Below are positions 1-17,253 of a stretch of DNA of 17,253 bases, piece by piece. The notes beneath the pieces were generated by a model. It did no database searches and was not told the DNA's origin. It worked only from the letters and a program-made list of their open reading frames with translations. The stretch is taken from the NCBI GenBank assembly GCA_964035545.1, contig CAXIUT010000276.1:1-17253 (forward strand), in the 5' to 3' direction. Every line of letters starts with the position of its first letter. Positions within the stretch are counted from its first letter, which is position 1. The DNA comes from Bugula neritina (Eukaryota > Animalia > Bryozoa). The position numbers were made by a program, and so were the translations under genes.

Positions 1-81
1 CCCAACCCCAACCCCAACCCCAACCCCAACCCCAACCCCAACCCCAACCCCAACCCCAACCCCAACCCCAACCCCAACCCC
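1..81. repeat. Left telomere, (CCCCAA)n
   Basis: C4A2 hexamer repeats from base 1 to 81; this is the Tetrahymena/oligohymenophorean-type telomere repeat. Confidence 0.98.
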
Positions 82-3100: not shown

Positions 3101-4167
3101 AAAAAAGAAAATTATCTTGGTTAAGTATTATAGACACATAGTCTTCAGTTGAAGATTTCATCTCATCCTTTCAGATTATTTTAAATTTACACTGTAAAAG
3201 GTTAGCCATTAAAAGTAGGATCGACATAATAAGAAACATTTTCTAATGTTCCACTAGATAATACTTCTTTTAATATTTAATATCCTTCATCTGCAGATCC
3301 ATAAAATTAAATTAAAAATTTTTAGAAAGAAATAAACCTGATAAAATTCAAGTAAAATTGTTATCAACTGTAGAAATGTTACAATTGATAATATTAGTTT
3401 TAATCAAAGCATGAATAAACATATTTTAAAAGTAGTTCAAAAATTTAATAAAACAAATGATAAAAATGATGTCCCTTATGTTAGGATTTATTAGAAAAAA
3501 TAAGGAAAGTTCTTTTATAAAGATTAAATAGATATTTTTAAGGAACAAATAAAAATAGTAACAAAATAAATCTTCTAAAAAAATTAAATCATGAAAAAAA
3601 TAAGTATAATGACCAATAATAATTCATAAGAAATAACACCTTTGATAGTTAAATTGATTTTTAACAAAATTGAATCATAAAAAATATAAAGTTAAAATGA
3701 AAGATATCGAAAAGACCAACAAAATGTTAATAGCAAGTAGTAAATAAACCAAAAAACAGGGAATAATTGAAAGTAAACGTATTAATCTAAAACAAGTCAA
3801 TGATGATATAAAAAAATATGAATAAATGATTCTAAGTGAAAAAGAAAAAGAAAATAAGTATATTTTAAAAGGTCAATAACTTATAAAATAACTCTAATAG
3901 CTTACAAAGAAAAGATAAAGAGAAGAAGAGGAATATAAAAAGTATGCTTATCTGATTTATGATCAATTAAACAACAATATTCCACAGACACTATTTGAAT
4001 TAATTAAGATGACGATGAACTCGAGGATGCAAAAGAAATAATCTTAGCAATTTACAACTAAGGAAGAATTTAGACAAAAATTTTTTAATGATTTTATCAA
4101 GACTTACTCATAGGTTAGATATGACCTCTAGAATAAAGTAAAGTATCATCTTGGTTTAAAAAAATGA
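187..4167 (+). CDS. Large P-loop GTPase (TRAFAC class, AIG1/GIMAP/septin-like) with long coiled-coil regions, about 1300 aa
   Basis: With TAR=Glu: G1 GFTGSGKST (from 1775), G2-like IGHSFSLSET (~1918-1947), G3 FCDNPGFHDTRG (~2024-2059), G4-like IFVTK (~2261-2275). The frame is open from ~620 to 3351. The full model needs a frame change between 617 and 810 (indel or intron), a 22-nt intron at 3352-3373 and a frame change between 3658 and 3768 (probable A-run error). TGA at 4165-4167. The GTPase domain is solid; the gene ends are less certain. Confidence 0.7.
3352..3373 (+). other. Putative 22-nt spliceosomal intron in the GTPase gene
   Basis: GTAAAATTGTTATCAACTGTAG. Its removal joins the upstream frame (which hits TGA shortly after) to the downstream open frame (...IKFK/NVTIDNISF). 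Confidence 0.55.
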
Positions 4168-4376
4168 TTCAAACCATTAAATTATCCTATCAATTATCTT
4201 ATTTGAATAATTATATTCTTTCTATCAAATAATAAAACATTTTAGGTAATAATAATCATCTAAAAAGAAAATAATTAATTCTCAAAAAATAATATATTTT
4301 TTCAAGAAATAATCGGTTTATAAACGACAATAATTTATTCTCATAATAAGTATTGATTTATCAAATAATAACAAAA

Positions 4377-6725
4377 ATGGAATCTTCTGATTCGAAACCT
4401 TCAAGGACAGGTGGACAAGAAGCTTAAAATATCAGAGTTGCAAAAGCAGCACATAGTTTAAGCAACAACTACGATGATGAAAAAGGTTGCCTTGGAGAGA
4501 AACTTTAATAGGTTGAATAAAAAGAGATGAAGGATAGACTTCATAAATATATTGGAGTTATTACATTTTTAGACAACTACAAAGATTTAGGATCAGGTAC
4601 AGGGATTATCATCTCACGTAATTTGGTTTTGACATGTGCTCATAATATCTATGATCATAAAAAAAAATCTCTTTATTCAGGTCTAAAGTTTTATCCTGGA
4701 CATAGAGGAGAATCAAAAAACTTCTACTAAGTTGAGTCATGGTTTTTCCCTAAATAGTACAAGATAGATCATGGATATAAATATGAGTATGCTTTACTAA
4801 AGCTAAAATAAGAATTTCAGAGTTCAGATTTTATTTCTTTAAATATAGGTCAAATGAAAGTCGATAATGAACTAAAAATAGCCATCTATGGATATCCTGA
4901 AGATAAATTCAAATTAATAAGTCATGAAAAAGAACTGTTTCTAGTTAACCAGTGGGGATTGAGTAAAAAAGGAAGAATTATTTAAATAAAAGAAAAAAGT
5001 GGATAAATAATTCACAATATATCAACTTTTCCTGGTCAAAGTGGTGCTCCATTGATCGGAATTGATAAAAACCAAAACCTCGCAATTATTGGTATTCATA
5101 AAGGAGGAATGAAATCAAAAGAAGCAAACATAGCAAGATTGATTACTCCTTAATTGATCACAGTTTTGGAAAAAGAAACTCTTAGTCTTAAAGCCTAAAT
5201 GTTTAAGCCATTGATTGATATTGATTACAGCTAGATAAAAGGTTACTTAAACTTTTAGATACATCCTTTATGGAAAGAAGAGATTTAATCAACTTCAAAA
5301 GTTAATCCAAGAGATCCGAAAGTTTATTATGAGCTAGGAAGTGAACTTTTAAGAATAAATAAAACCAAAGAAGCGATTAAGTGTTATGAAAAAGCAATTG
5401 AGATAAATCCAAACTATAAATAAGCTAACATAAAACTAAAAATTTCTCAATAATAATTGTTAAAAACAAAAAAAATAGGAGAACAAAAAGAATTAAATTA
5501 ATTTAAGATCTAAAAATAAAGATAAAATATTAATTTTGATCAAAAAAAGAAATAATAATCAAAAAATAATGATTATGAGATTGAAAAAGTGAATAAAGAA
5601 AGAAAAAATTAAATTATTTCGGGGTAATAATGAATAAATTAAGATTAAGATTAAAATAGGAAATAAAAATAAAATAAATGGAAAAAAAAGAAGAAATAAT
5701 AGATAATAAGATTCCTATCAAATAATATGGGTATTAAGGTATAATAAAGTTTATGAAAAATGAAACAAAATAAGAGAAAAAACTAAATGTCAGTGAATTA
5801 ACAGTCACCAATACAGTATTTAATCATCAATATAGTGTAAAAAATTAATAACTAAGTTGTACTTAATCATCGATATAGCGTAAAAGATTAATAACTAAGT
5901 TGTATTTAATCATTGATATAGTGTAAAAGATTAATAACAAAGATGTATTTAATCATCAATATAGTGTAAAAGATTAATAACTAAGCTGTATTTAATCATT
6001 GATATAGGGTAAAAGATTAATAACTAAGATGTATTTAATCATCGATATAAGGGTAAAAGATTAATAACTAAGGGGTATTTAATCATCGATATAGAGTAAA
6101 AGATTAATAACTAAGAAGTATTTAATCATCGATATAGTGTAAAAAATTAATAACTAAGATGTATTTAATCATCGATATAGGGTAAAAGATTAATAACTAA
6201 GATGTATTTAATCATCGATATAAGGGTAAAAGATTAATAACTAAGGAGTATTTAATCATGGATATAGAGTAAAAGATTAATAACTAAGATGTATTTAATC
6301 ATCGATATAGGGTAAAAGATTAATAACTAAGCTGTATTTAATCATTGATATAGGGTAAAAGATTAATAACTAAGATGTATTTAATCATTTATATAGCGTA
6401 ATATCATTGTAAAGTAGATGTGGTAAATCATTATTAACAAAGAAATCGTTTGGAGAGGAGTTGTCTAAGTTTCGAAATTTAAAGAAGTTGACCCTTGAAT
6501 TCAAGTAATTTTGGAAGAAAGAAGTCATTGTCTATTCAATTTTGGCTGTTTCAATTCTTGGATCAAGGCTATCAATGAGGATTTAACAAAACTTGAATCA
6601 ATTCAGCTAAATATCTACTAATTATACAAACAGAAAAATCATAAAGATAAGTAGTTGTTGCATGATACAGCTGGACAACTAAATTGAAGAGAAAGGATAT
6701 TCTTAAAGTGAACTACGTGCCTTGA
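4377..6725 (+). CDS. V8/glutamyl-endopeptidase-like serine protease + TPR + charged coiled coil + leucine-rich repeats (multi-intron gene)
   Basis: ATG 4377. Protease motifs GTGIIIS..LVLTCAH (His 4641), YEYALLKL (triad-Asp position is GAG, 4785), IYGYP, STFPGQSGAP (Ser 5040) and IIGIH. TPR DPKVYYELG..AIKCYEKAIEINPNY (~5313-5418). A 20-nt intron at 5624-5643 removes the in-frame TGA at 5631 and restores the frame into LNVSELTVTNT. After the 5816-6442 array come LRR-like KSFGEELSKFRNLKKLTLEF and LTKLESIQLNIY. Further 20-nt introns at 6505-6524 and 6651-6670; TGA at 6723-6725. Confidence 0.8.
5624..5643 (+). other. 20-nt spliceosomal intron
   Basis: GTAATAATGAATAAATTAAG. It contains the in-frame TGA; splicing gives GG|A and an open frame to 5815. 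Confidence 0.8.
5816..6401 (+). repeat. 43-bp tandem array, about 13.6 units; unit = 20-nt GT..AG + 1 nt + 20-nt GT..AG + 2 nt
   Basis: Unit starts at 5816, 5859, 5902, 5945, 5988, 6031, 6075, 6118, 6161, 6204, 6248, 6291, 6334 and 6377. Consensus GTATTTAATCATCGATATAG-N-GTAAAAGATTAATAACTAAG-NN. Units 6 and 10 are 44 bp. Confidence 0.97.
6398..6442 (+). other. Two non-repeat 20-nt introns (6398-6417 and 6423-6442) flanking a 5-nt micro-exon ATGTG
   Basis: GTAATATCATTGTAAAGTAG and GTAAATCATTATTAACAAAG are both exactly 20 nt and GTA..AG. Splicing yields C|AT GTG|AAA TCG = H-V-K-S, in the LRR frame. Confidence 0.65.
6505..6524 (+). other. 20-nt spliceosomal intron
   Basis: GTAATTTTGGAAGAAAGAAG. 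It falls right after the LRR strand LTLEF and moves the frame onto the next LRR (LTKLESIQLNIY). Confidence 0.7.
6651..6670 (+). other. 20-nt spliceosomal intron
   Basis: GTAGTTGTTGCATGATACAG. Splicing extends the frame to TGA 6723; without it the protein would end at an earlier TGA (~6685). Confidence 0.55.
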
Positions 6726-6903
6726 ATAAAATAAAATCAATTAATTAACATTATTTCTTGAGAGTAAAGTGTATCTATTAACAGTCCAGATAAGTAGACA
6801 CTTGTTGTATTGGTGATTATACTATCTTTAAATACTAAAAATATCATATCATTAAAATTAGATAATATCTTTGAAGATAATATATTTTGTATTTTATAAT
6901 CTT

Positions 6904-7341
6904 ATGATTGAAATCTAAGATAAAAATGAGTAATATACTAAAAATTATAGAGAAATGACCTTTCTTAGAAAAGAGATTTCAAAAATTTTGTCTATTTATT
7001 TGACTAAAGTTACTGTGCAAGCGAACTTTGTCTTATTTTAGTTCAATTTTCTTCAACATAAAAATAGATTTCAACAGCCATTTATCAAACAACTAGAAGA
7101 AGAACTATCATATGTTGGTGCAAATGATCTTAAAAGAAACGAAACACGACAATCTAAAGAGTTCGTACTTGGATATTACTACTTCTAGATATAAATGTCT
7201 CATCTAAATCCCAATTTTTACAAGAGATTAGGGATGATAGACATCTAATACTTGTTATCTAGAGGAAAAAGTACATATTTATCACATAGATCTCTACCAT
7301 TTCATTTGAAATAGATCCAAAAATAAGTGAGGAATGCTTGA
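6904..7341 (+). CDS. Hypothetical protein (3' end uncertain, may extend to ~7460)
   Basis: ATG 6904 after an AT-rich spacer; TGA-free frame to 7339-7341 under TAR=Glu. Possible tiny introns at 6930-6950 (21 nt) and 7271-7289 (19 nt). No motif recognised. Confidence 0.4.
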
Positions 7342-7560
7342 GTATGCTAGTTTAAAAGTGGATCATTCAAAAATAAAAAATGTTTCTATGCTGAACCTGA
7401 TAAATTTAGTAAGATTAGTGATATTGGCACTACTTTGCTTATTTTTCAGCTTAAAATGAATTACTTAATTTAATTTTTTTTAAAAAGTTCATTTTTTAAA
7501 ATTATCAAAAAATATCAAGAACTTGAATAATCCAAACTTGTTTATTTTATTTTATTAATA

Positions 7561-9036
7561 TCAGTGTTTATCACCTAAACCAGAACACTTAGGATGAACT
7601 GTCCTAGTATTGAGCATAATCGATGTTGCACTTGCTCTCTATTCAGGTTCAATTGTTCTTTTGCTTACCATTTAATACTTAGACTCTGTTTGAATATACT
7701 TAGTTATTTATTTGAACATTCCCTCTTGCTTATGACTACTTGTATTAAAAGGCATTAAAGTTTTAATAGGCGTGTATATTTAATCTTTCGAACAGAACTG
7801 TGAAACAGTTTCTTTGGGAGCCATTCTATCCAATTTAAATTTATCCATTTTTGCTTGTTTGTATTATCTAGGATTAGTTGCTATTGCTGATTTTGTCGAA
7901 CTGAAAAGATGCCTTGCTTCTAGATATATATCATGGATCTTTTTGGCATCAGATGTGGAAGGATTGCGGCTGTGAACTGTCTAATATGCTGAGTTGTTGT
8001 GAGTGTGACCAGTTTCGATTACTGATGGGTTGTGAGAATGACGACTGTCTTTTGGTAATTTATTGTTAGTCTATTTTTGTTTTAAGCAGTTGATTGCTTT
8101 TTTTGGAGTTTTTATATGTATTTTGTTCTATTTGGTGTTATTTTCTAGCTAGATTCCGAGTTATTATACTGATATTCTTTGTTATTTTTCATATTTTAGC
8201 ATTTTTTTAAGCAAATCTTTTATCTTTATATCATAATCTATTCTCTATATATCTTCATGAATCTACTTAACTCTTTTCTTTATCTTTTCCTCTCTAAAAA
8301 TAAATTTATTCTATCCAAATACTATATCAACAATCTAGCTCTAGAACTTAACTTATTTCCCTAGACACATTTCCAACACAACCATACCAAGCCCAAAGAT
8401 CTGACTCTTGCAAGTAACTGTGACATATTCTTAAGTTCCAACAATTTTCAATAACTCTGGAGCAATTCCATAATCTCTGCAAAGCATCATTTAATCAAAC
8501 TCTTAATAGAACCTCAAAGGATGACAAATCTACGAATCTTCTTCTTGAATCAACATGTACCTTCCAGCTTTATTTCGTAAAATAGATTGTTTACATATAT
8601 GATAATATTTGACATTATGATCTTCTGATAGTTTCAGAGCCAAAGTACAATGTCTTAGCAAAGTTAATATTTATTCAGAAGTGTAAGGTGTAGTTTGAAC
8701 TTTACGATAATACTGTTCTAAATGTAGAGTTGTAACAAAATGTTAATAAAATATTTACTGTTGTAATGATCTTGAACAAATTCCACTTTAACCATCTTGT
8801 CCATATACTTTTTTCAATATATGCCAGCATCCAGCATGATTTTGTTTCCCATTTAGCCATACTATCTTCCTATTGATCTCTTCTATCACTGTCTCACATC
8901 GCTGTTTCATCATGCATAGTTGACTTTTTCCTCCAAAAGTGACTTATACTTATATTAGTGGTCCTAGCAGGGGATGGAGGGTTAGTTTTTTTTGTTGGTA
9001 TTTGATTTTAAGTTGTTCTGATGGTTCGTTTCCCAT
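7561..9036 (-). CDS. Protein-kinase-fold pseudokinase with predicted N-myristoylation, 491 aa
   Basis: Uninterrupted frame beginning MGNEPS. Kinase C-lobe motifs: IFYEHF (hinge), YTSEEILTLL, GIAPELL, KSQIFGLGMVVLEM and LLKKMLKYEKEQRIS. The catalytic loop is degenerate (YYHICKQSIL) and there is no DFG. Confidence 0.8.
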
Positions 9037-9123
9037 AGAATTCGAGTTAGTATATTATACAATACTAGAACTTCAATTGATATACAATTCAAATATAACT
9101 ACAAAAATAATCTAATTTAAATA

Positions 9124-11701
9124 ATGCTGCATGAATTACTCTTCGCCTTGAAAGGAAAAACAGCATCAATAATAAAAAATACAGGTCATTAATTTACTAT
9201 TGATTCTAGCACTTCTATTCTCACAGAACCAGAAGCTGCGATGATAAGTGAAATTGCACAGACAGGATATTATTATCTTCAATTGAACAGTTTTGTGGAA
9301 AGCGAGATGACTGAGATATCATTTGGCGATATAAATAAAAATCCAAGTGTGTATCGTAAAGCTTTTGCTTATGGATTAAAAAAAGCATTGGCATAATATG
9401 AATAAGTAATCAATACGATTGAGAATGATTTTCTTGCTAGTAAATATTTTACTTTTGGCAACTTGAAATCTCTATTGACAAAATACAACATCATCATGAA
9501 AGAATTATGTTCTATTTTAGAAAAAATAATTAGTTAGAAATATCGAGGATCGACTATTATTGATTTACTATGGTAGTATAGTCATACTGGTTCTTTGTGG
9601 TTGAAATAGTGGATAAGTATTATTTTGAAAGAATGTCAAACTGTGTTTATCAATCAGGTGATTGCTTGGATTTTGCATGGATAGATTATAGATTGTTAGG
9701 GGTAGTTTTTTATTCATCGAGTTGTGCAGGTGGCTCAGTAGAGAGTTCAGTTTAGAAGTTAGAATAAAAAAAAAGTTTAAATGAATGCTTGGGATATCTA
9801 TACGCTTGATGGGTAGTTGGTTCCTCAAAGTATAGTTGGATTGGCAACGGCAGTAAAGATACTATTTATTGGCAAAAGTGTTAAAATACTAAGAAGTGCT
9901 GGTAAGATATCAGCCATCCCTTCATAGCAAATAATAAAAGATCTACGTTGTTTATTCCGATAAACTTACAGTCAGATGTTATTTTAAAGCGTTATCTAGA
10001 AAATTCGTTCAGCCATAGCCTCCTAGATGATAAATCTGATCATCGGCTAGCAAAACCTAATAAAATAGTTATAACTGATCAATGATTACTATTTAATGCA
10101 GAAGGGAGATTTCTATCATCATTTTTTATAGTAATCGCATTGTCTGACCCATATAACTAATAAATAGAAATTGCAAAGAAAAGTCAATGAGACTTGTTTG
10201 CCTAATGCTTTTATGCGGTTGGGTTAGTCAGAGGAGGGCAAGAAGGTGAGTTTTTAGATCAGGGCGAATGGTTTTAGTTATGTTGGTTTTAAAAATTTGG
10301 TTGATATCTGTCCTGTGGGTGGTGTTGATTTGGTTGAGGGTAAGTATGTGAGGTTGACGTCTTCTGGTGGTGGTCTTTGGCATCGTCGCAAGCAAATCGT
10401 TTAAAATAATTTCGTGGTGATGTTTAGTGTTTGTTTCAAGCGATCTAAATCTTTGTTCAGAGGGAGAAGATAGAATAGTAAGGAGTTGATGAATAATACG
10501 ATAGCTTTGGTGATTCAGAATCAAAAATAAATAACTGGAGCAGTCTATGACAATCCTGCCAATTTGAGTAGAATCAATGAGTACATAGCTATTTCTGTTG
10601 GATATCGTTATAGCAAATAATAACGTAATTACTAATCTTTGATATCTGTTAGTTATCGAAATTAGAAGAAGTATCATAAACCTATTGATATCGGCCAATT
10701 ACTACCAAAAAGAATTAATTTTATTGATGAAGGTATATATTTTATAAAAGTTGCTTATCAAAATTAGATTCTTAAGATATCAGTCAACCCTTTGAATTCA
10801 GTCTAGATGGCATAGTAAAACACCCTCAAAGTAGATAGTTTACGTATGTCGAGTTATTTGAATTTATAGATGCAAAAAGGAAGTATAGGTTTATTATCGA
10901 ATTTGACTGATCCATGTTGTCAGGTATAAATCTAGCAGTGGTAAATGGTTTGTAAACCGGCTAATTACTATACTGATTTCTTTACTGATTTGCATCTTAA
11001 ATTAGATATCCAATGGCCTTTGAATCTCATCTTGACGAGTGATTTGATGTAGGTTTTTTCTAGGATAAATAAATTTCTTTTTCCTATTAGGCAGATTCAG
11101 GTGTAAATCTAGATGTTGTGGGTGAGAATTCCTCGGAAGATCAAGGAGGCTAGGAAGGAGTAGTTGATGGAAGAGAGGGAGTTGAATATGTTTGAGAGGA
11201 ATTTGAGTGGGACGAGATCGAGGATGAACATGGTGTTGAATAATTTATGGAGGTATTATCAATTTGACGTGATAGCTACTGCTTGGCTCAAATTGAAAAC
11301 GAGTATCGCATAGAGCAACGATTTCTAAGGTAAATAATCATCAAATATAGATGTGATAAGGATGATAACAAAATATGCGAACACAATCCAGACTATGTTC
11401 TTTTTCAATGCTATTAAAATTCAGAGATATATTTATGATATACTTCGTTATGTGCGTAATTTTATCATATTTTTTTAGAGGTAGTTATTCTGTTAATGAT
11501 AGGTTATAGGGGTAAAACGTGATTGACGGACGAAGCAAGCGTGATCACAAGAGCATAGACTAGTAATTCAGAAGAGTAGTGAATGAATTTTATAAATTGT
11601 TGAAGGAGTTATCGAGAAATAGCAATTCTGCGCATTTGTTTCATCTGACGCAGAGGATGTAGGGGTGTGTGGAGGAGAAAAATACCTTTTTGGTTTATTG
11701 A
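9124..11701 (+). CDS. TUBGCP4: Gamma-tubulin complex component 4 (Spc97/Spc98 family) with an internal lectin-like insertion
   Basis: N-terminus MLHELLFALKG, plus SVYRKAFAYGL, QVIAWILHG, KILFIGKSV, DYYLMQKGDFYHHFL, IQWPLNLIL and NNLWRYYQFDVI, match GCP4 motifs. Introns at 11330-11350 and 11481-11502; TGA at 11699-11701. Confidence 0.88.
11330..11350 (+). other. 21-nt intron in GCP4 (3n, no stop)
   Basis: GTAAATAATCATCAAATATAG. AT-rich; removal gives SNDFE-D-VIRM, which fits GCP4 spacing. Confidence 0.65.
11481..11502 (+). other. 22-nt intron in GCP4
   Basis: GTAGTTATTCTGTTAATGATAG. It contains the in-frame TGA at 11497; removal is required to reach the C-terminal FYKLL...HLFHLTQRM helix. 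Confidence 0.85.
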
Positions 11702-11767
11702 TTATTCTAATAATCATTATTATTTTAAACAATTTTTATAAATATCAAGGATGTAGTTGATTATCAA

Positions 11768-12865
11768 TCATGCACTGGTGCCTAGATAGTGCTAGAGCTA
11801 GCTTTGAATTTGTGGGAGTTGGCAGTGTAGGTATGGTCTTTGTTGGATTAGTACTTTTAGGAGGTCGGATAGGGATGGGCTTTGTCGAAGGAGTTTGTTG
11901 AAGACTCGGGTTGATAGGTAGAAAGTGTGGTCGGATGAGGAGATGTAGATGCGACCGCCTTGGAATATTAAACATTTGTTGAGCTAGTTCTATTATTATG
12001 GTAGAGCAGAACAGGCTATCAGCTAGGATTTTTCAGGTTAATTTTCAAATTTATCTGATTAACAGTTTTTTATTTCTTCTTGAGGTTTTTATGACAATAC
12101 CTCATTTTATTGTATTTTTTATTTTAAATTTATTTATTGTGATTGTATTTGTTCTATTTATTCTGACGATTATTCTGATTCCTTTGATAACTGCTCCTCT
12201 TACTAGAAAAATGACTAATTCTACCTAACTAAATACGTAGAATGATAGTTGATATCTTTCTCCATCTAAACCTAAAATACAATATTCTCTTATTTACCAT
12301 CGTTTTTAGCTGAATTCTAACATATTTTTAAATTATCCATCTATTTATGCATATCTTGATAATTCTAAATACAACATTCCATCTTTTATAGACAACATAC
12401 CATCTCTCCACCTATTCGAATATCCCCAAAATCTTTATCTTAGACTTCTTATTTCTAATCCCCCATTTTCTAATCCTAAAAATCATTCAAATAGACATCC
12501 ACCTACTCCTATGATCTCTAATCTCGACTGCCTCGACTGATATTCACCAAAGACGCATATATTTTCATCTACAACTTATCTTCCTATTTCTCTTCCTATT
12601 TATTTTTATTTGACATCTTGATGCTTTTATTGATGGATATTTGGTGTTCTTATTTGAGTTGGTATTTGCTATTTTGGCTGTTTTATCTTTTTAAGGAATT
12701 GCTCAATTGATTTGAAGGTTGCTTTTTTAGGTGATGTTGTAAATAGGTTGTGCAGATTTCGTTTGGTTTTATTTTTTTGGTCGGGCGGGGTTAGTATTTG
12801 CGAAGGGAGTTTTAAAAACGGAATTGGATGTAAGATGTTTTTGTGTGGATTTTGTTGCGAGACAT
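11768..12865 (-). CDS. Hypothetical protein with an acidic Glu-rich middle, 365 aa
   Basis: Single TGA-free frame MSRNKIHTK...HYLGTSA*. TAA/TAG codons cluster with GAA/GAG in acidic runs. No family recognised. Confidence 0.7.
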
Positions 12866-12988
12866 AAAGGCTTCCGTTATTATTATAATTGCTTTTTAAT
12901 AAGATTAATTCGTATTATCTTTTTTATTAAGAATTATCAAAATATATCAAATAACCTATAATACTAATATAGCAATTTATCTTTCTAA

Positions 12989-13585
12989 TCATTGTTATTT
13001 TTTCAACATCAGTTCCAATACTTTTTCAACAAATTTAACATTTCTTTCATGAGAACTTAATTAGAATACTGGGAAATGTATGAAAAGGCTGCATACTTTT
13101 TAATTTTTCAATGCCAGTTAATGTGTGCTTTTGAAGTAGATATAATTGCATAGATATCTTCCTGGATCTGTACTCATTTGAACTGGAAATTATTTTAGCT
13201 GTCCCAGTAACCACTATAAATCAATCTTTGTTTCTATGCTTTTATCTAGTTGTGATTCTTTGCATATTTGTTCATTTCGTGGTTGGTAGCCATTGTTATC
13301 AGGGATGCAAAAATCTTTATTGTTGTAGCAACTTCGTTATAAATGATATATTTTGTTAGGTCCTACTCCGAAATGTAAATTGAGGATCTTTTTTGTTGGT
13401 GATGAGGTTATTTGTTGTTGTATTTTTGAGATGTAGTTGTCTGCATCTTGGGCGGTTACTTATACGATTGAACATGATAGGTTGGGTTGTTTTTGTTTGA
13501 GGAAGTGTTAGACTAGTAATTGGGTTGGGTTGACTTAGTGATTGCCGAATACTTTAAAACCTGTAAGATAGACTTCGTCGAACAT
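12989..13585 (-). CDS. PGPEP1: Pyroglutamyl-peptidase I (peptidase C15), 198 aa
   Basis: YLTGFKVFG..NPT, LHFGV, HLER (catalytic Glu), PDNNGYQP, STDPGRYLCNYIYF (catalytic Cys) and SLFIHFP (catalytic His). Confidence 0.93.
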
Positions 13586-13614
13586 GACAAATATATTTTA
13601 ATAATAATTGTAGA

Positions 13615-14268
13615 ATGCTAAAATTCAAAGAAATGAAAAACAGCATCATCAGAAAAAAAGATCCTCTTCTTCAAACACATACACCCAAACACCAACACAC
13701 CTCACCTATCAACTTCAACACCAAGAGCAGCAATCGCTCACCTCTTACCTTTCATAACTAGAAACTATCTGGAAGAGGTCACTAAGATAGAGATTAGTAT
13801 GGTTCTATCAGACCTAAAATATAGTGGAAAGAAAATGTTTATACTAATGGGAAAGTCAACTTTGGAGAGCCAAGCAGAGAGGGAAGTGAGTGGCAGCCAT
13901 TGAGAAAGCAAAATCGTAGACAGAGTAATATCTATACTGAATAGCGGTGTGAGACTCCAAGTAAGAAGTGTTTGTCTTTTGCTGGATTGGTGCAAAGTAA
14001 AAAACAGACTAGTAGCAAATACGCAGAATCAGACCGTAAAAATGAAAGGGAATCAAGTATATCAAAATTGAAGTGTAAGTTATTTGGTTTAAAAAAGATA
14101 ATATCATAGAAAGAGAGTAGTCATAGCAAACCTCAACAGATATTTGATGTTATGATAAGAAGAGAGCCTTAGGAAAAGAGGACAATGGAGGATGATTTTG
14201 TGAAGATATCTATTAAAGATGAAAAGGAGTTCAGGGAAGAATTAGATATGTCGCCTTATCTGTATTGA
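13615..14268 (+). CDS. Hypothetical low-complexity protein, about 217 aa (alternative start 13633)
   Basis: TGA-free frame from ATG 13615 to TGA 14266-14268, flanked by AT-rich spacers. Ser/Lys/Arg-rich; no motif recognised. Confidence 0.6.
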
Positions 14269-14355
14269 TTCATTTATTTTGTTTATTTAAGTGGATAATT
14301 TTGATGTTATTTAGTATTTAGAGTTATCTATATTATAGTATAAATTATAAGAGTT

Positions 14356-17039
<2,684 letters not shown>

Positions 17040-17179
17040 TTGTTGTATAAGTATTTTGTTGTTTTTGGTAGAAATATGACGAAAATGATAGAATTATTAT
17101 CATAGTTTTTAAATATTAATACTAAGTCAATATAGTAATAAATAATATGCTATCAAATATAGTTAAACCTAACATCAAA

Positions 17180-17253
17180 GGGGGTTGGGGGTTGGGGTTG
17201 GGGTTGGGGTTGGGTTGGGGTTGGGGTGGGTTGGGGTTGGGGTTGGGGTTGGG
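17180..17253. repeat. Right telomere, (TTGGGG)n
   Basis: G4T2 repeats to the end of the sequence, with a few one-base irregularities. Confidence 0.98.

What the first reader, a model, noticed from the sequence alone, without database searches (positions are those of the whole stretch)
5762..6525. Possible combinatorial diversity generator in an LRR loop
Inference from the geometry: gain or loss of a unit by unequal recombination adds or removes exactly one residue. Splicing from an A-donor to a later A-acceptor deletes whole codons in frame. Splicing from a B-donor to a later B-acceptor pairs the first base of one unit with the last two bases of another, creating new codons in frame. The cassette sits just after an LRR-like beta-strand, a region that often contacts ligand in LRR receptors. 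One locus could therefore yield many loop variants, at a much finer grain than the whole-repeat exon shuffling known in Tetrahymena LRR genes.
Basis: inference. Interest (0 to 1): 0.8.

Follow-up and report, generated by a model that had tools for sequence, protein, structure and literature searches.

The report
Tandem mini-intron cassette, one codon per repeat
A 43-base repeat inside a ciliate gene reads as two 20-base introns plus three coding bases, so each copy would add one amino acid; the pattern is far from chance, but no RNA data exist to show it is spliced that way or gives many isoforms.

Summary
Positions 5816-6442 hold 29 consecutive GT..AG segments of 17-21 nt, separated by 1-nt and 2-nt spacers. 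Thirteen 43/44-bp units plus a diverged tail leave 16 codons. These codons are in frame with the flanking exons.

This is not chance:
- Only about 0.6% of random 43-mers parse this way.
- The longest chance chain in 705 kb of related ciliate DNA has 7 segments, against 29 here.
- The three spacer columns differ 18 times more between units than the 40 intron columns.

The host is not Tetrahymena. It is a peritrich-type ciliate in which TAA and TAG encode Glu, it has C4A2 telomeres, and the window is a whole 17-kb minichromosome. This lineage is reported to have narrow, tiny intron lengths.

My best reading (about 0.45) is that each segment is an ordinary tiny intron removed on its own, and that the array grows by unequal recombination.

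The LRR identity is only weakly supported. No RNA run exists for this organism, so nothing about splicing is shown.

Other first-stage notes (s1-433998, s1-434000, s1-434058) claim similar hyper-fragmented genes on other DNA of this genome. I could not check them.

The parts
4377..5623 (+). First coding exon: V8-like (Glu-specific type) trypsin-fold serine protease, one TPR repeat and a Glu/Lys-rich linker
   Evidence: The frame is open under the peritrich code. TPR_1 scores 43.8 bits, above its cut-off. Trypsin_2 is weak on a 67-aa piece. There are 228 relatives, and JGI names some of them V8-like Glu-specific endopeptidase. Relatives align at 31-40% over 240-395 aa.
5624..5643 (+). Candidate 20-nt phase-2 intron GTAATAATGAATAAATTAAG; removing it deletes the in-frame TGA and joins the protease frame to the downstream frame
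   Evidence: Read from the sequence. Inferred; no RNA evidence.
5644..5815 (+). Exon ending ...EKKLNVSELTVTNT, phase 0 at 5815
   Evidence: Translation. An exact 254-nt contig of run X1 covers 5565-5818.
5816..6376 (+). Thirteen full units: A segment (20 or 21 nt), 1-nt spacer, B segment (20 nt), 2-nt spacer. Residual codons read FLYSDGKYDGNAD
6377..6442 (+). Diverged tail: A14 (6377-6396), C (6397), 17-nt GT..AG segment (6398-6414), 8-nt exon TAGATGTG (6415-6422), 20-nt GT..AG segment (6423-6442). Residual codons read LDV
   Evidence: The two tail segments resemble A (ATCATTG) and B (TTAACAAAG), as expected of decayed edge repeats.
6443..6504 (+). Exon KSFGEELSKFRNLKKLTLEF + AA (LRR-like LxxLxLxxN)
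   Evidence: The variant 6472 T>C in other contigs is synonymous in this frame.
6505..6524 (+). Candidate 20-nt phase-2 intron GTAATTTTGGAAGAAAGAAG
   Evidence: Removing it brings a second FG...L..L..I.L motif into frame. The variant 6570 T>C is synonymous only in the post-intron frame.
6525..6650 (+). Exon (N)HCLFNFGCFNSWIKAINEDLTKLESIQLNIYELYKQKNHKD
   Evidence: There is only a weak Pfam hit to the TIR1 LRR region, E 0.026.
6651..6670 (+). Candidate 20-nt phase-2 intron GTAGTTGTTGCATGATACAG (least certain)
   Evidence: Sequence. It is needed to avoid a TGA in that frame.
6671..6725 (+). Last exon, up to the TGA at 6723-6725

Best explanation
The array is a tandem cassette inside a protein-coding gene of a peritrich-type ciliate whose normal introns are about 20-25 nt. 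Each 43-bp unit consists of two complete, lineage-typical GT..AG introns: A in phase 0 and B in phase 1. These are separated by a 1-nt exon (codon base 1) and followed by a 2-nt exon (codon bases 2-3).

The nearest donor-acceptor pairs are the ones a short-intron spliceosome would pick, so each segment is most likely removed on its own. The array would then contribute 13 + 3 codons (FLYSDGKYDGNAD-LDV) between ...LTVTNT and KSFGEEL... .

The array grows and shrinks by unequal recombination or slippage, in single units and in 4-unit (173-bp) blocks, so each event changes the protein by whole residues. The intron bases stay nearly identical, while the three exonic bases have diverged almost to saturation.

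Shown: the anatomy, the frame, the non-random variation, the block duplication and the genetic code. Inferred: transcription, splicing of each segment, and the selective reason for the fast-changing bases.
For: (1) All 29 segments start with GTA and end with AG, are 17-21 nt long, and leave multiples of 3 nt with no TGA.

(2) Pairwise divergence is 0.61 at the 3 exonic columns against 0.034 at the 40 intron columns. The only indels, one extra A in units 6 and 10, lie inside an intron. They break the 43-bp period but keep GT..AG and the 3 exonic bases.

(3) The exonic bases look like codons: base 1 is G in 6 of 13 units and base 3 is T in 10 of 13.

(4) The host uses the peritrich code: the DEAH box reads IID*AH*R, and also TGQE*I and VP*IQR. 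Three peritrich genomes are reported to have narrow tiny-intron length distributions like Paramecium, and a bias away from phase 2 in later introns (PMC13685798).

(5) Other candidate 20-25-nt introns occur in the same window. The one at 11456-11480 is needed to reach the gamma-tubulin-complex protein C-terminus. Those at 5624-5643 and 6505-6524 are in the same gene.

(6) The downstream exons have no in-frame start of their own, and two variants are synonymous in the predicted frames. They therefore look coding and need to be joined across the array.

(7) Retaining any single 20-nt or 17-nt segment gives a premature TGA between codons 479 and 511, against the normal stop at 569. Such mis-spliced forms would be recognisable to surveillance.

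(8) Chance is excluded.
Against: There is no RNA evidence of any kind. No RNA run holds this chromosome, and the two holder runs cover coding and non-coding DNA alike with no splice joints.

I know of no precedent for runs of 1-nt and 2-nt exons. Neighbouring splice sites 1-2 nt apart cannot be occupied at once, so 29 ordered splicing events would be needed.

One 627-nt intron (5816-6442, a multiple of 3) keeps the frame equally well and gives a more canonical 23-residue repeat.

Near-identity of the intron parts could simply mean a very young minisatellite. The join to the protease gene and the LRR identity are inferred only. No second such array was found in any sequence I could reach.
Confidence: 0.45

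Rival explanations
1. Dead or dying locus. The cassette descends from a real two-intron unit, but this copy is an expanding minisatellite in a gene that is no longer expressed or no longer correctly spliced. The pattern of variation would be inherited from a functional ancestor or paralogue.
For: The C-terminal part has no detectable relatives. The LRR-like tail is short and weak. The third candidate intron and the end of the gene are uncertain. The region is the least conserved part of the chromosome between runs: 0.55 and 0.28 of sampled words held, against 0.87 and 0.68 for 9100-17100. Another gene on the chromosome, the DEAH helicase, carries five frame slips.
Against: Differences accumulated after the block duplication still avoid the intron bases (4/12 against 3/160), which implies ongoing constraint in this lineage. 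Variants in the protease part rarely hit second codon positions (1 of 15). The two in the LRR-like exons are synonymous.
Confidence: 0.2
2. One long intron containing a minisatellite. The whole of 5816-6442, or large chunks of it, is removed, and the spacer bases never reach the mRNA.
For: GT at 5816 and AG at 6442 give a 627-nt intron, a multiple of 3, that joins LTVTNT directly to KSFGEEL. This makes a canonical 23-residue LRR-like repeat. One loose end of a paralogous contig departs from the window at 5851 and reaches ...TTTACAG|GAGGAT, which is compatible with a roughly 61-nt single intron in a relative.
Against: It gives no reason for variation to pile up on exactly the three bases between AG and GT. 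It also gives no reason why the indels spare them. A 627-nt intron would be far outside the narrow tiny-intron range reported for peritrichs. The internal sites look exactly like the lineage's own introns and lie closer to each donor.
Confidence: 0.15
3. The cassette is a combinatorial diversity generator: alternative pairing of A or B donors with later acceptors yields many in-frame loop variants of an LRR receptor from one locus.
For: The geometry allows it, since every A-A or B-B pairing stays in frame. The exonic bases evolve fast, as in recognition loops.
Against: No isoform data exist. Skipping needs introns of 63 nt or more in a lineage with narrowly tiny introns. The LRR is not confirmed by any profile. 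The protein has no signal for a receptor role, and no paralogous arrays were found.
Confidence: 0.08
4. A DNA-level or RNA-structure element, such as a protein-binding array, an origin of replication or a structured RNA, whose GT/AG ends are incidental.
For: There are two conserved 20-mers at a 43-bp period, each with a 6-bp palindrome (ATCGAT, ATTAAT).
Against: There is no Rfam match. The fold is no better than shuffles, z = -0.47. The element sits in frame between two coding exons on the coding strand. Only about 0.6% of random units would mimic the intron parse.
Confidence: 0.05

Closest known systems
Tiny spliceosomal introns of ciliates (Paramecium about 20-30 nt, Stentor and Blepharisma 15-16 nt; narrow distributions also reported for three peritrichs, PMC13685798, PMC12862383)
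   Same: GT..AG ends, A/T-rich, 17-21 nt. Lengths are mostly not multiples of three, so retention shifts the frame into a stop.
   Different: Known tiny introns are scattered singly between ordinary exons. Here 29 stand head to tail with 1-2 nt between them, and they fall into two nearly identical sequence types.
Extreme micro-exons: the single-nucleotide exon of Arabidopsis (PMC4674806) and plant micro-exons of 15 nt or less (PMC8831610)
   Same: Exons of 1-2 nt that carry part of a codon between two canonical introns.
   Different: Those are isolated, conserved, and flanked by introns of normal length. Here there would be 14 one-nucleotide and 13 two-nucleotide exons in a row, and they are the variable part.
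[quoted passage not shown]
   Same: A tandem intragenic exon-plus-intron unit with a fixed phase, in a fast-evolving ciliate gene family. Unit number changes by recombination.
   Different: That unit is about 150-350 bp and encodes a whole 30-residue repeat. Here the unit is 43 bp and encodes one residue, the phases are 0 and 1, and the lineage and genetic code differ.
Recursive splicing with juxtaposed AG|GT sites, and nested or twin introns ('stwintrons', PMC8469720). Recursive splicing is cited from my own knowledge.
   Same: A long intervening stretch is removed stepwise through closely juxtaposed 3' and 5' splice sites.
   Different: Recursive sites leave no exon bases. Here 1 or 2 bases would be kept at every step and would be translated.
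Intron gain by tandem duplication across AG|GT, and introner families (10.1101/2020.10.14.339549, PMC4540971)
   Same: Near-identical intron copies within one genome. Duplication creates new functional introns. Unit A shares TAATCATC with two other candidate introns in the window.
   Different: Introners are dispersed and much longer. The two extra TAATCATC sites are no more than chance predicts for the motif alone.
Minisatellite with higher-order repeat structure
   Same: Head-to-tail 43-bp units, a 173-bp higher-order period, and more diverged edge copies.
   Different: A neutral minisatellite does not confine its variation to three columns that coincide with the gaps between GT..AG segments.

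Membership tests
Spliceosomal (U2-type) tiny introns of ciliates | GT at the 5' end and AG at the 3' end | tested here: met
   29 of 29 segments.
Spliceosomal (U2-type) tiny introns of ciliates | Length within the narrow range typical of the host lineage | tested here: inconclusive
   The segments are 17-21 nt. Other candidate introns in the window are 20-25 nt. The literature says only that peritrich lengths are narrow and Paramecium-like. No measured distribution exists for this species.
Spliceosomal (U2-type) tiny introns of ciliates | Removal restores or keeps an open reading frame joining coding exons | tested here: met
   The result is in frame with no TGA. However, removal of 5816-6442 in one piece does the same.
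Spliceosomal (U2-type) tiny introns of ciliates | Absent from mature RNA (splice junctions observed) | not testable with these tools
   No RNA run holds the locus. The laid runs behave as DNA.
Micro-exons | Very short exon retained in the mRNA and translated | not testable with these tools
   There is only indirect support: a codon-like base bias and variation confined to these bases.
Leucine-rich repeat proteins | Significant match to an LRR profile, or several tandem LxxLxLxxN-type repeats | tested here: inconclusive
   No Pfam LRR hit on the stop-free pieces of 20-36 aa. There is only a weak hit to the TIR1 LRR region, E 0.026-0.038. One canonical LKKLTLEFN and two looser motifs can be read by eye. 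The spliced protein could not be submitted to the profile or structure tools.
Tetrahymena 90-bp-exon LRR arrays | Exons of exactly 90 bp flanked by phase-2 introns, in the genus Tetrahymena | tested here: not met
   The exons are 1 and 2 nt and the phases are 0 and 1. The host uses TAA and TAG for Glu, so it is not Tetrahymena.
Peritrich nuclear genetic code (NCBI table 30) | TAA and TAG read as glutamate, TGA the only stop | tested here: met
   TAG stands at both Glu positions of the DEAH box plus the following ER (IID*AH*R). TAA stands at the Glu of TGQEEI and of PEIQR. The motifs themselves are established knowledge of DEAH-box helicases.
Neutral minisatellite | Differences between copies spread without regard to position in the unit | tested here: not met
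   16 of 26 differences fall on 3 of 43 columns, P 8e-13.
Combinatorial (alternative-splicing) diversity generator | Many isoforms from one locus, observed in RNA | not testable with these tools
   No RNA data.

The most novel reading that the evidence does not exclude
Peritrich ciliates may possess a class of 'codon cassettes'. These would be tandem pairs of tiny introns that split every codon after its first base. Recombination would then edit proteins one residue at a time, the coding bases would diversify rapidly under selection, and alternative donor-acceptor pairing would add a repertoire of loop isoforms from a single locus. The unchecked first-stage notes of hyper-fragmented genes elsewhere in this genome would be further members.
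Probability: 0.1. Interest if true: 0.9.

Novelty: new variant of a known kind. Interest (0 to 1): 0.62.

Why it matters
If the segments are spliced one by one, this would be the densest intron-exon packing known: 29 introns in 627 nt, with exons of one and two bases. It would show that a short-intron spliceosome can work with essentially no exon between neighbouring introns. It would also show that a minisatellite can be a protein-coding device that adds single residues. That bears on two open questions: how small an exon can be, and how new introns arise and multiply.

It would also warn that standard gene finders and read aligners cannot see such genes.

If it is not spliced this way, it remains a clear case of a repeat whose variation is confined to three columns, and that would still need an explanation.

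Tried and rejected
1. RNA evidence. Two run searches found only three holder runs, none on record as RNA. Laying X1-X4 on 4000-8999 gave DNA-like cover and no splice joints.

2. Tetrahymena origin and the TAA/TAG = Gln code. Rejected by the DEAH-box reading and by the gene compactness.

3. The uncultured oligohymenophorean PL0344 as source. Its median intron is 57 bp, so it is rejected.

4. Searching for the unit in public DNA. There were no matches in metagenome, viral or prokaryote genome collections.

5. Relatives of the gene. The word search was blank. The full search found 228 relatives, mostly short fragments of 36-66% identity from metagenomes, with no annotated gene model. Eighty-seven fetched loci, 83 of them scanned as the 705-kb set, hold protease relatives. 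None holds a comparable chain, and none matches the C-terminal part.

6. Structured RNA. No Rfam hit, and the fold is no better than shuffles.

7. ORF-bridging scan for tiny introns across the window. It was too noisy to give a length distribution, because with TGA as the only stop wrong frames stay open.

8. A two-intron reading with a 2-nt exon at 11456-11502 in the gamma-tubulin-complex gene. Rejected because it runs into a TGA; a single 25-nt intron fits.

9. Submitting the spliced protein to the profile, structure or database tools.

10. Literature searches found no description of runs of 1-2-nt exons in ciliates.
Full report
WHAT THE WINDOW IS. The window begins with 13.5 copies of CCCAAC and ends with 12.5 copies of GGGGTT. 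It is therefore a complete, telomere-capped 17,253-bp macronuclear minichromosome of a ciliate. It carries about nine tightly packed genes:
- a large Lys/Asn-rich ORF;
- the protease gene discussed here;
- a kinase-like gene on the minus strand;
- a gamma-tubulin-complex protein (825 uninterrupted codons);
- two further minus-strand genes, one a pyroglutamyl-peptidase-like protein;
- a DEAH-box helicase.

GENETIC CODE AND HOST. That is wrong. In the helicase, the invariant DEAH box with its following ER reads IID*AH*R, with TAG at both Glu positions. TAA stands at the Glu of TGQEEI and of PEIQR. So TAA and TAG encode glutamate and TGA is the only stop, which is the peritrich nuclear code.

A recent comparative paper states that three peritrich genomes have intron-length distributions as narrow as those of Paramecium. 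It also states that later introns in peritrich genes favour phase 1 and avoid phase 2 (PMC13685798). The exact length peak is not given there.

THE OBSERVATION. Tandem Repeats Finder reports 13.6 copies of a 43-bp unit at 5816-6401, and a 173-bp higher-order period. Parsed explicitly, 5816-6442 consists of 29 GT..AG segments: 26 of 20 nt, two of 21 nt and one of 17 nt.
- Type A (GTATTTAATCATCGATATAG) is followed by one base.
- Type B (GTAAAAGATTAATAACTAAG) is followed by two bases.
- The tail is C, a 17-nt segment, TAGATGTG, and a 20-nt segment.

The leftover bases read TTT CTT TAT TCT GAT GGG AAA TAT GAT GGA AAT GCT GAT CTA GAT GTG, that is FLYSDGKYDGNAD-LDV. They are in frame with ...KLNVSELTVTNT, which ends in phase 0 at 5815, and with KSFGEELSKFRNLKKLTLEF, which starts at 6443.

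IS IT MORE THAN CHANCE? Yes.
- Only 0.5-0.65% of random or shuffled 43-mers can be parsed as two 17-23-nt GT..AG segments leaving three bases.
- In 705 kb of 83 related ciliate loci, scanned on both strands, the longest chance chain has 4-7 segments, against 29 here.
- Variation is confined to the three leftover columns. Sixteen of 26 departures from the consensus fall there (binomial P 8e-13, or 1e-6 if only the minimum number of changes per column is counted). Mean pairwise divergence is 0.61 there, against 0.034 in the 40 intron columns.
- Units 5-8 and 9-12 are a duplicated block that shares a 1-nt insertion in the second unit. Since that duplication they differ at 4 of 12 leftover bases but at only 3 of 160 intron bases (Fisher P 4e-4).
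- The only two indels lie inside an A segment. They break the 43-bp period but preserve GT..AG and the three leftover bases.
- The leftover bases look like codons: G-rich at base 1 and T-rich at base 3.
- Contigs of two independent short-read runs cover the array and show no indel differences there, so the fine structure is not an assembly artefact.

THE GENE AROUND IT. The ORF at 4377-5633 encodes a trypsin-fold protease with the motifs TCAHN and GQSGAP. It has 228 relatives, mostly short fragments of 36-66% identity, and some are named V8-like Glu-specific endopeptidase. Alignments reach 31-40% over 240-395 residues. One TPR repeat follows (TPR_1, 43.8 bits).

A 20-nt GT..AG segment at 5624-5643 removes the terminal TGA and joins this ORF to the frame that runs into the array. 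This join is inferred.

After the array, a 20-nt segment at 6505-6524 brings a second FG...L..L..I.L motif into frame. Two variants seen in 90-97% alike contigs (6472 T>C, 6570 T>C) are synonymous in exactly these frames. In the protease part, only 1 of 15 listed variants hits a second codon position.

The downstream exons have no in-frame start codon of their own, so they need to be joined across the array.

The LRR identity is weak. One motif, LKKLTLEFN, is canonical, and two are looser. No Pfam LRR model matches the short stop-free pieces. I could not submit the spliced protein, because it has no reference.

OTHER TINY INTRONS IN THE WINDOW. The gamma-tubulin-complex gene needs a 25-nt GT..AG segment at 11456-11480 to reach a plausible C-terminus. 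It also holds a 21-nt segment at 11330-11350, GTAAATAATCATCAAATATAG, which resembles unit A. A 22-nt segment at 4246-4267 shares the same TAATCATC motif. However, two extra copies of that 8-mer are no more than chance predicts.

An ORF-bridging scan was too noisy to give a length distribution.

HOW IT MOST LIKELY WORKS. In a lineage with intron-defined splicing of introns about 20 nt long, the first donor at 5816 should pair with the first AG beyond its branch region, at 5835, and so on along the array. The default outcome is therefore removal of each segment on its own, which leaves one codon per unit.

Retaining any single 20-nt or 17-nt segment leads to a premature TGA between codons 479 and 511, against the normal stop at 569. 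Mis-spliced forms would thus be open to surveillance, as argued for Paramecium.

The array changes length by unequal recombination in units and in 173-bp blocks. The edge copies are the most diverged, as in arrays under concerted evolution.

What keeps the intron bases nearly identical while the coding bases approach saturation is not explained by constraint alone. Recent expansion combined with accelerated change (diversifying selection) at the coding bases is the simplest account, but it is an inference.

WHAT IS NOT SHOWN. There is no RNA. Searches with 4400-8400 and 9100-17100 found only three holder runs of unknown kind. Laid on 4000-8999, X1 and X2 cover coding and non-coding DNA alike and show no splice joint. 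Transcription, splicing of each segment, and any isoform diversity all remain untested.

One 627-nt intron (5816-6442) keeps the frame equally well and gives a neat 23-residue repeat. A loose end of a paralogous contig at 5851 hints at a relative with a single intron of about 61 nt.

No second array was found in the window, in 87 fetched loci, or in three public collections. First-stage notes on other pieces of this genome (s1-433998, s1-434000, s1-434058) claim genes with 63-69 introns of about 21 nt, 1-nt exons at first codon positions, and phases 0 and 1 only. That would be the same design, but these notes are unchecked and I could not reach that DNA.

ALTERNATIVES REJECTED. There is no Rfam family and no RNA structure beyond shuffles (z = -0.47). 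A neutral minisatellite does not fit the variation pattern.

COMPARISON WITH WHAT IS KNOWN. The parts are known: tiny ciliate introns, a 1-nt exon in Arabidopsis (PMC4674806), stepwise removal at juxtaposed AG|GT sites, and tandem exon-intron units in Tetrahymena LRR genes (PMC6564038). The arrangement is not. I found no description of head-to-tail tiny introns splitting each codon after its first base, with one codon per 43-bp repeat.

VERDICT. The interpretation as a combinatorial diversity generator is only partly supported: the geometry, the unit gain and the fast-changing coding bases hold, but isoforms and the LRR surface do not. I put the mini-intron, codon-per-unit reading at about 0.45. 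Its main rivals are a decaying locus (0.2), one long intron (0.15), the combinatorial model (0.08) and a non-splicing element (0.05). One cDNA amplicon would decide among them.

Noticed in passing
window 1-81 and 17181-17253: The window is a complete linear minichromosome with C4A2/G4T2 telomeres at both ends. The left telomere is perfect. The right one has several irregular repeats (GGGGGTT, GGGTT, GGGGT).
   Followed up: partly
window 15387-15545, 15733-15804, 16090-16200: TAA and TAG stand at invariant glutamate positions of the DEAH helicase (DEAH-ER, TGQEEI, PEIQR). The organism therefore uses the peritrich code (TAA/TAG = Glu), not the Tetrahymena/Paramecium code.
   Followed up: yes
window 14357-17030 (+): The DHX16/Prp2-like helicase needs five single-base frame corrections, near 15297, 15545, 16210, 16455 and 16770. 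Four of them lie at homopolymer runs, and the one near 15545 follows AAA at an AAA-TGA stop. The 825-codon and 503-codon genes nearby are intact. This means either a decaying paralogue or lower assembly quality towards the right end. I did not lay reads there.
   Followed up: partly
window 15541-15546: One of those slips is at AAA-TGA-A, which resembles the AAA-stop +1 frameshift sites of Euplotes, with the host's only stop codon. It may be coincidence.
   Followed up: no
window 11330-11350 and 4246-4267: Two short GT..AG segments, of 21 and 22 nt, share TAATCATC with unit A of the array. Several candidate introns carry ATCAT 8-12 nt before the AG, which may be a branch-site motif.
   Followed up: partly
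window 9072-9126: Only about 54 bp separate the divergently transcribed kinase-like gene and the gamma-tubulin-complex gene. Spacers are very short throughout the chromosome.
   Followed up: no
L001, L002, L003 (whole loci): These are complete 5.5-kb chromosomes capped by C4A2 telomeres, from JGI metagenomes. They encode a relative of the protease (39% over 240 aa) fused to a coiled coil and a different C-terminal domain. The protease head seems to be combined with varying tails.
   Followed up: partly
P0001 (JGI, 5690 aa): A single called protein holds 24 stretches that match the 67-aa protease piece. It may be a giant tandem array of protease domains or a run-on gene call.
   Followed up: no
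window 4000-8999 against 9100-17100: The left part of the chromosome (protease and LRR-like genes) is held far less completely by the same runs (0.55 and 0.28 of words) than the right part (0.87 and 0.68). Many contigs there are only 90-97% alike, which suggests a fast-evolving or multi-copy region.
   Followed up: partly
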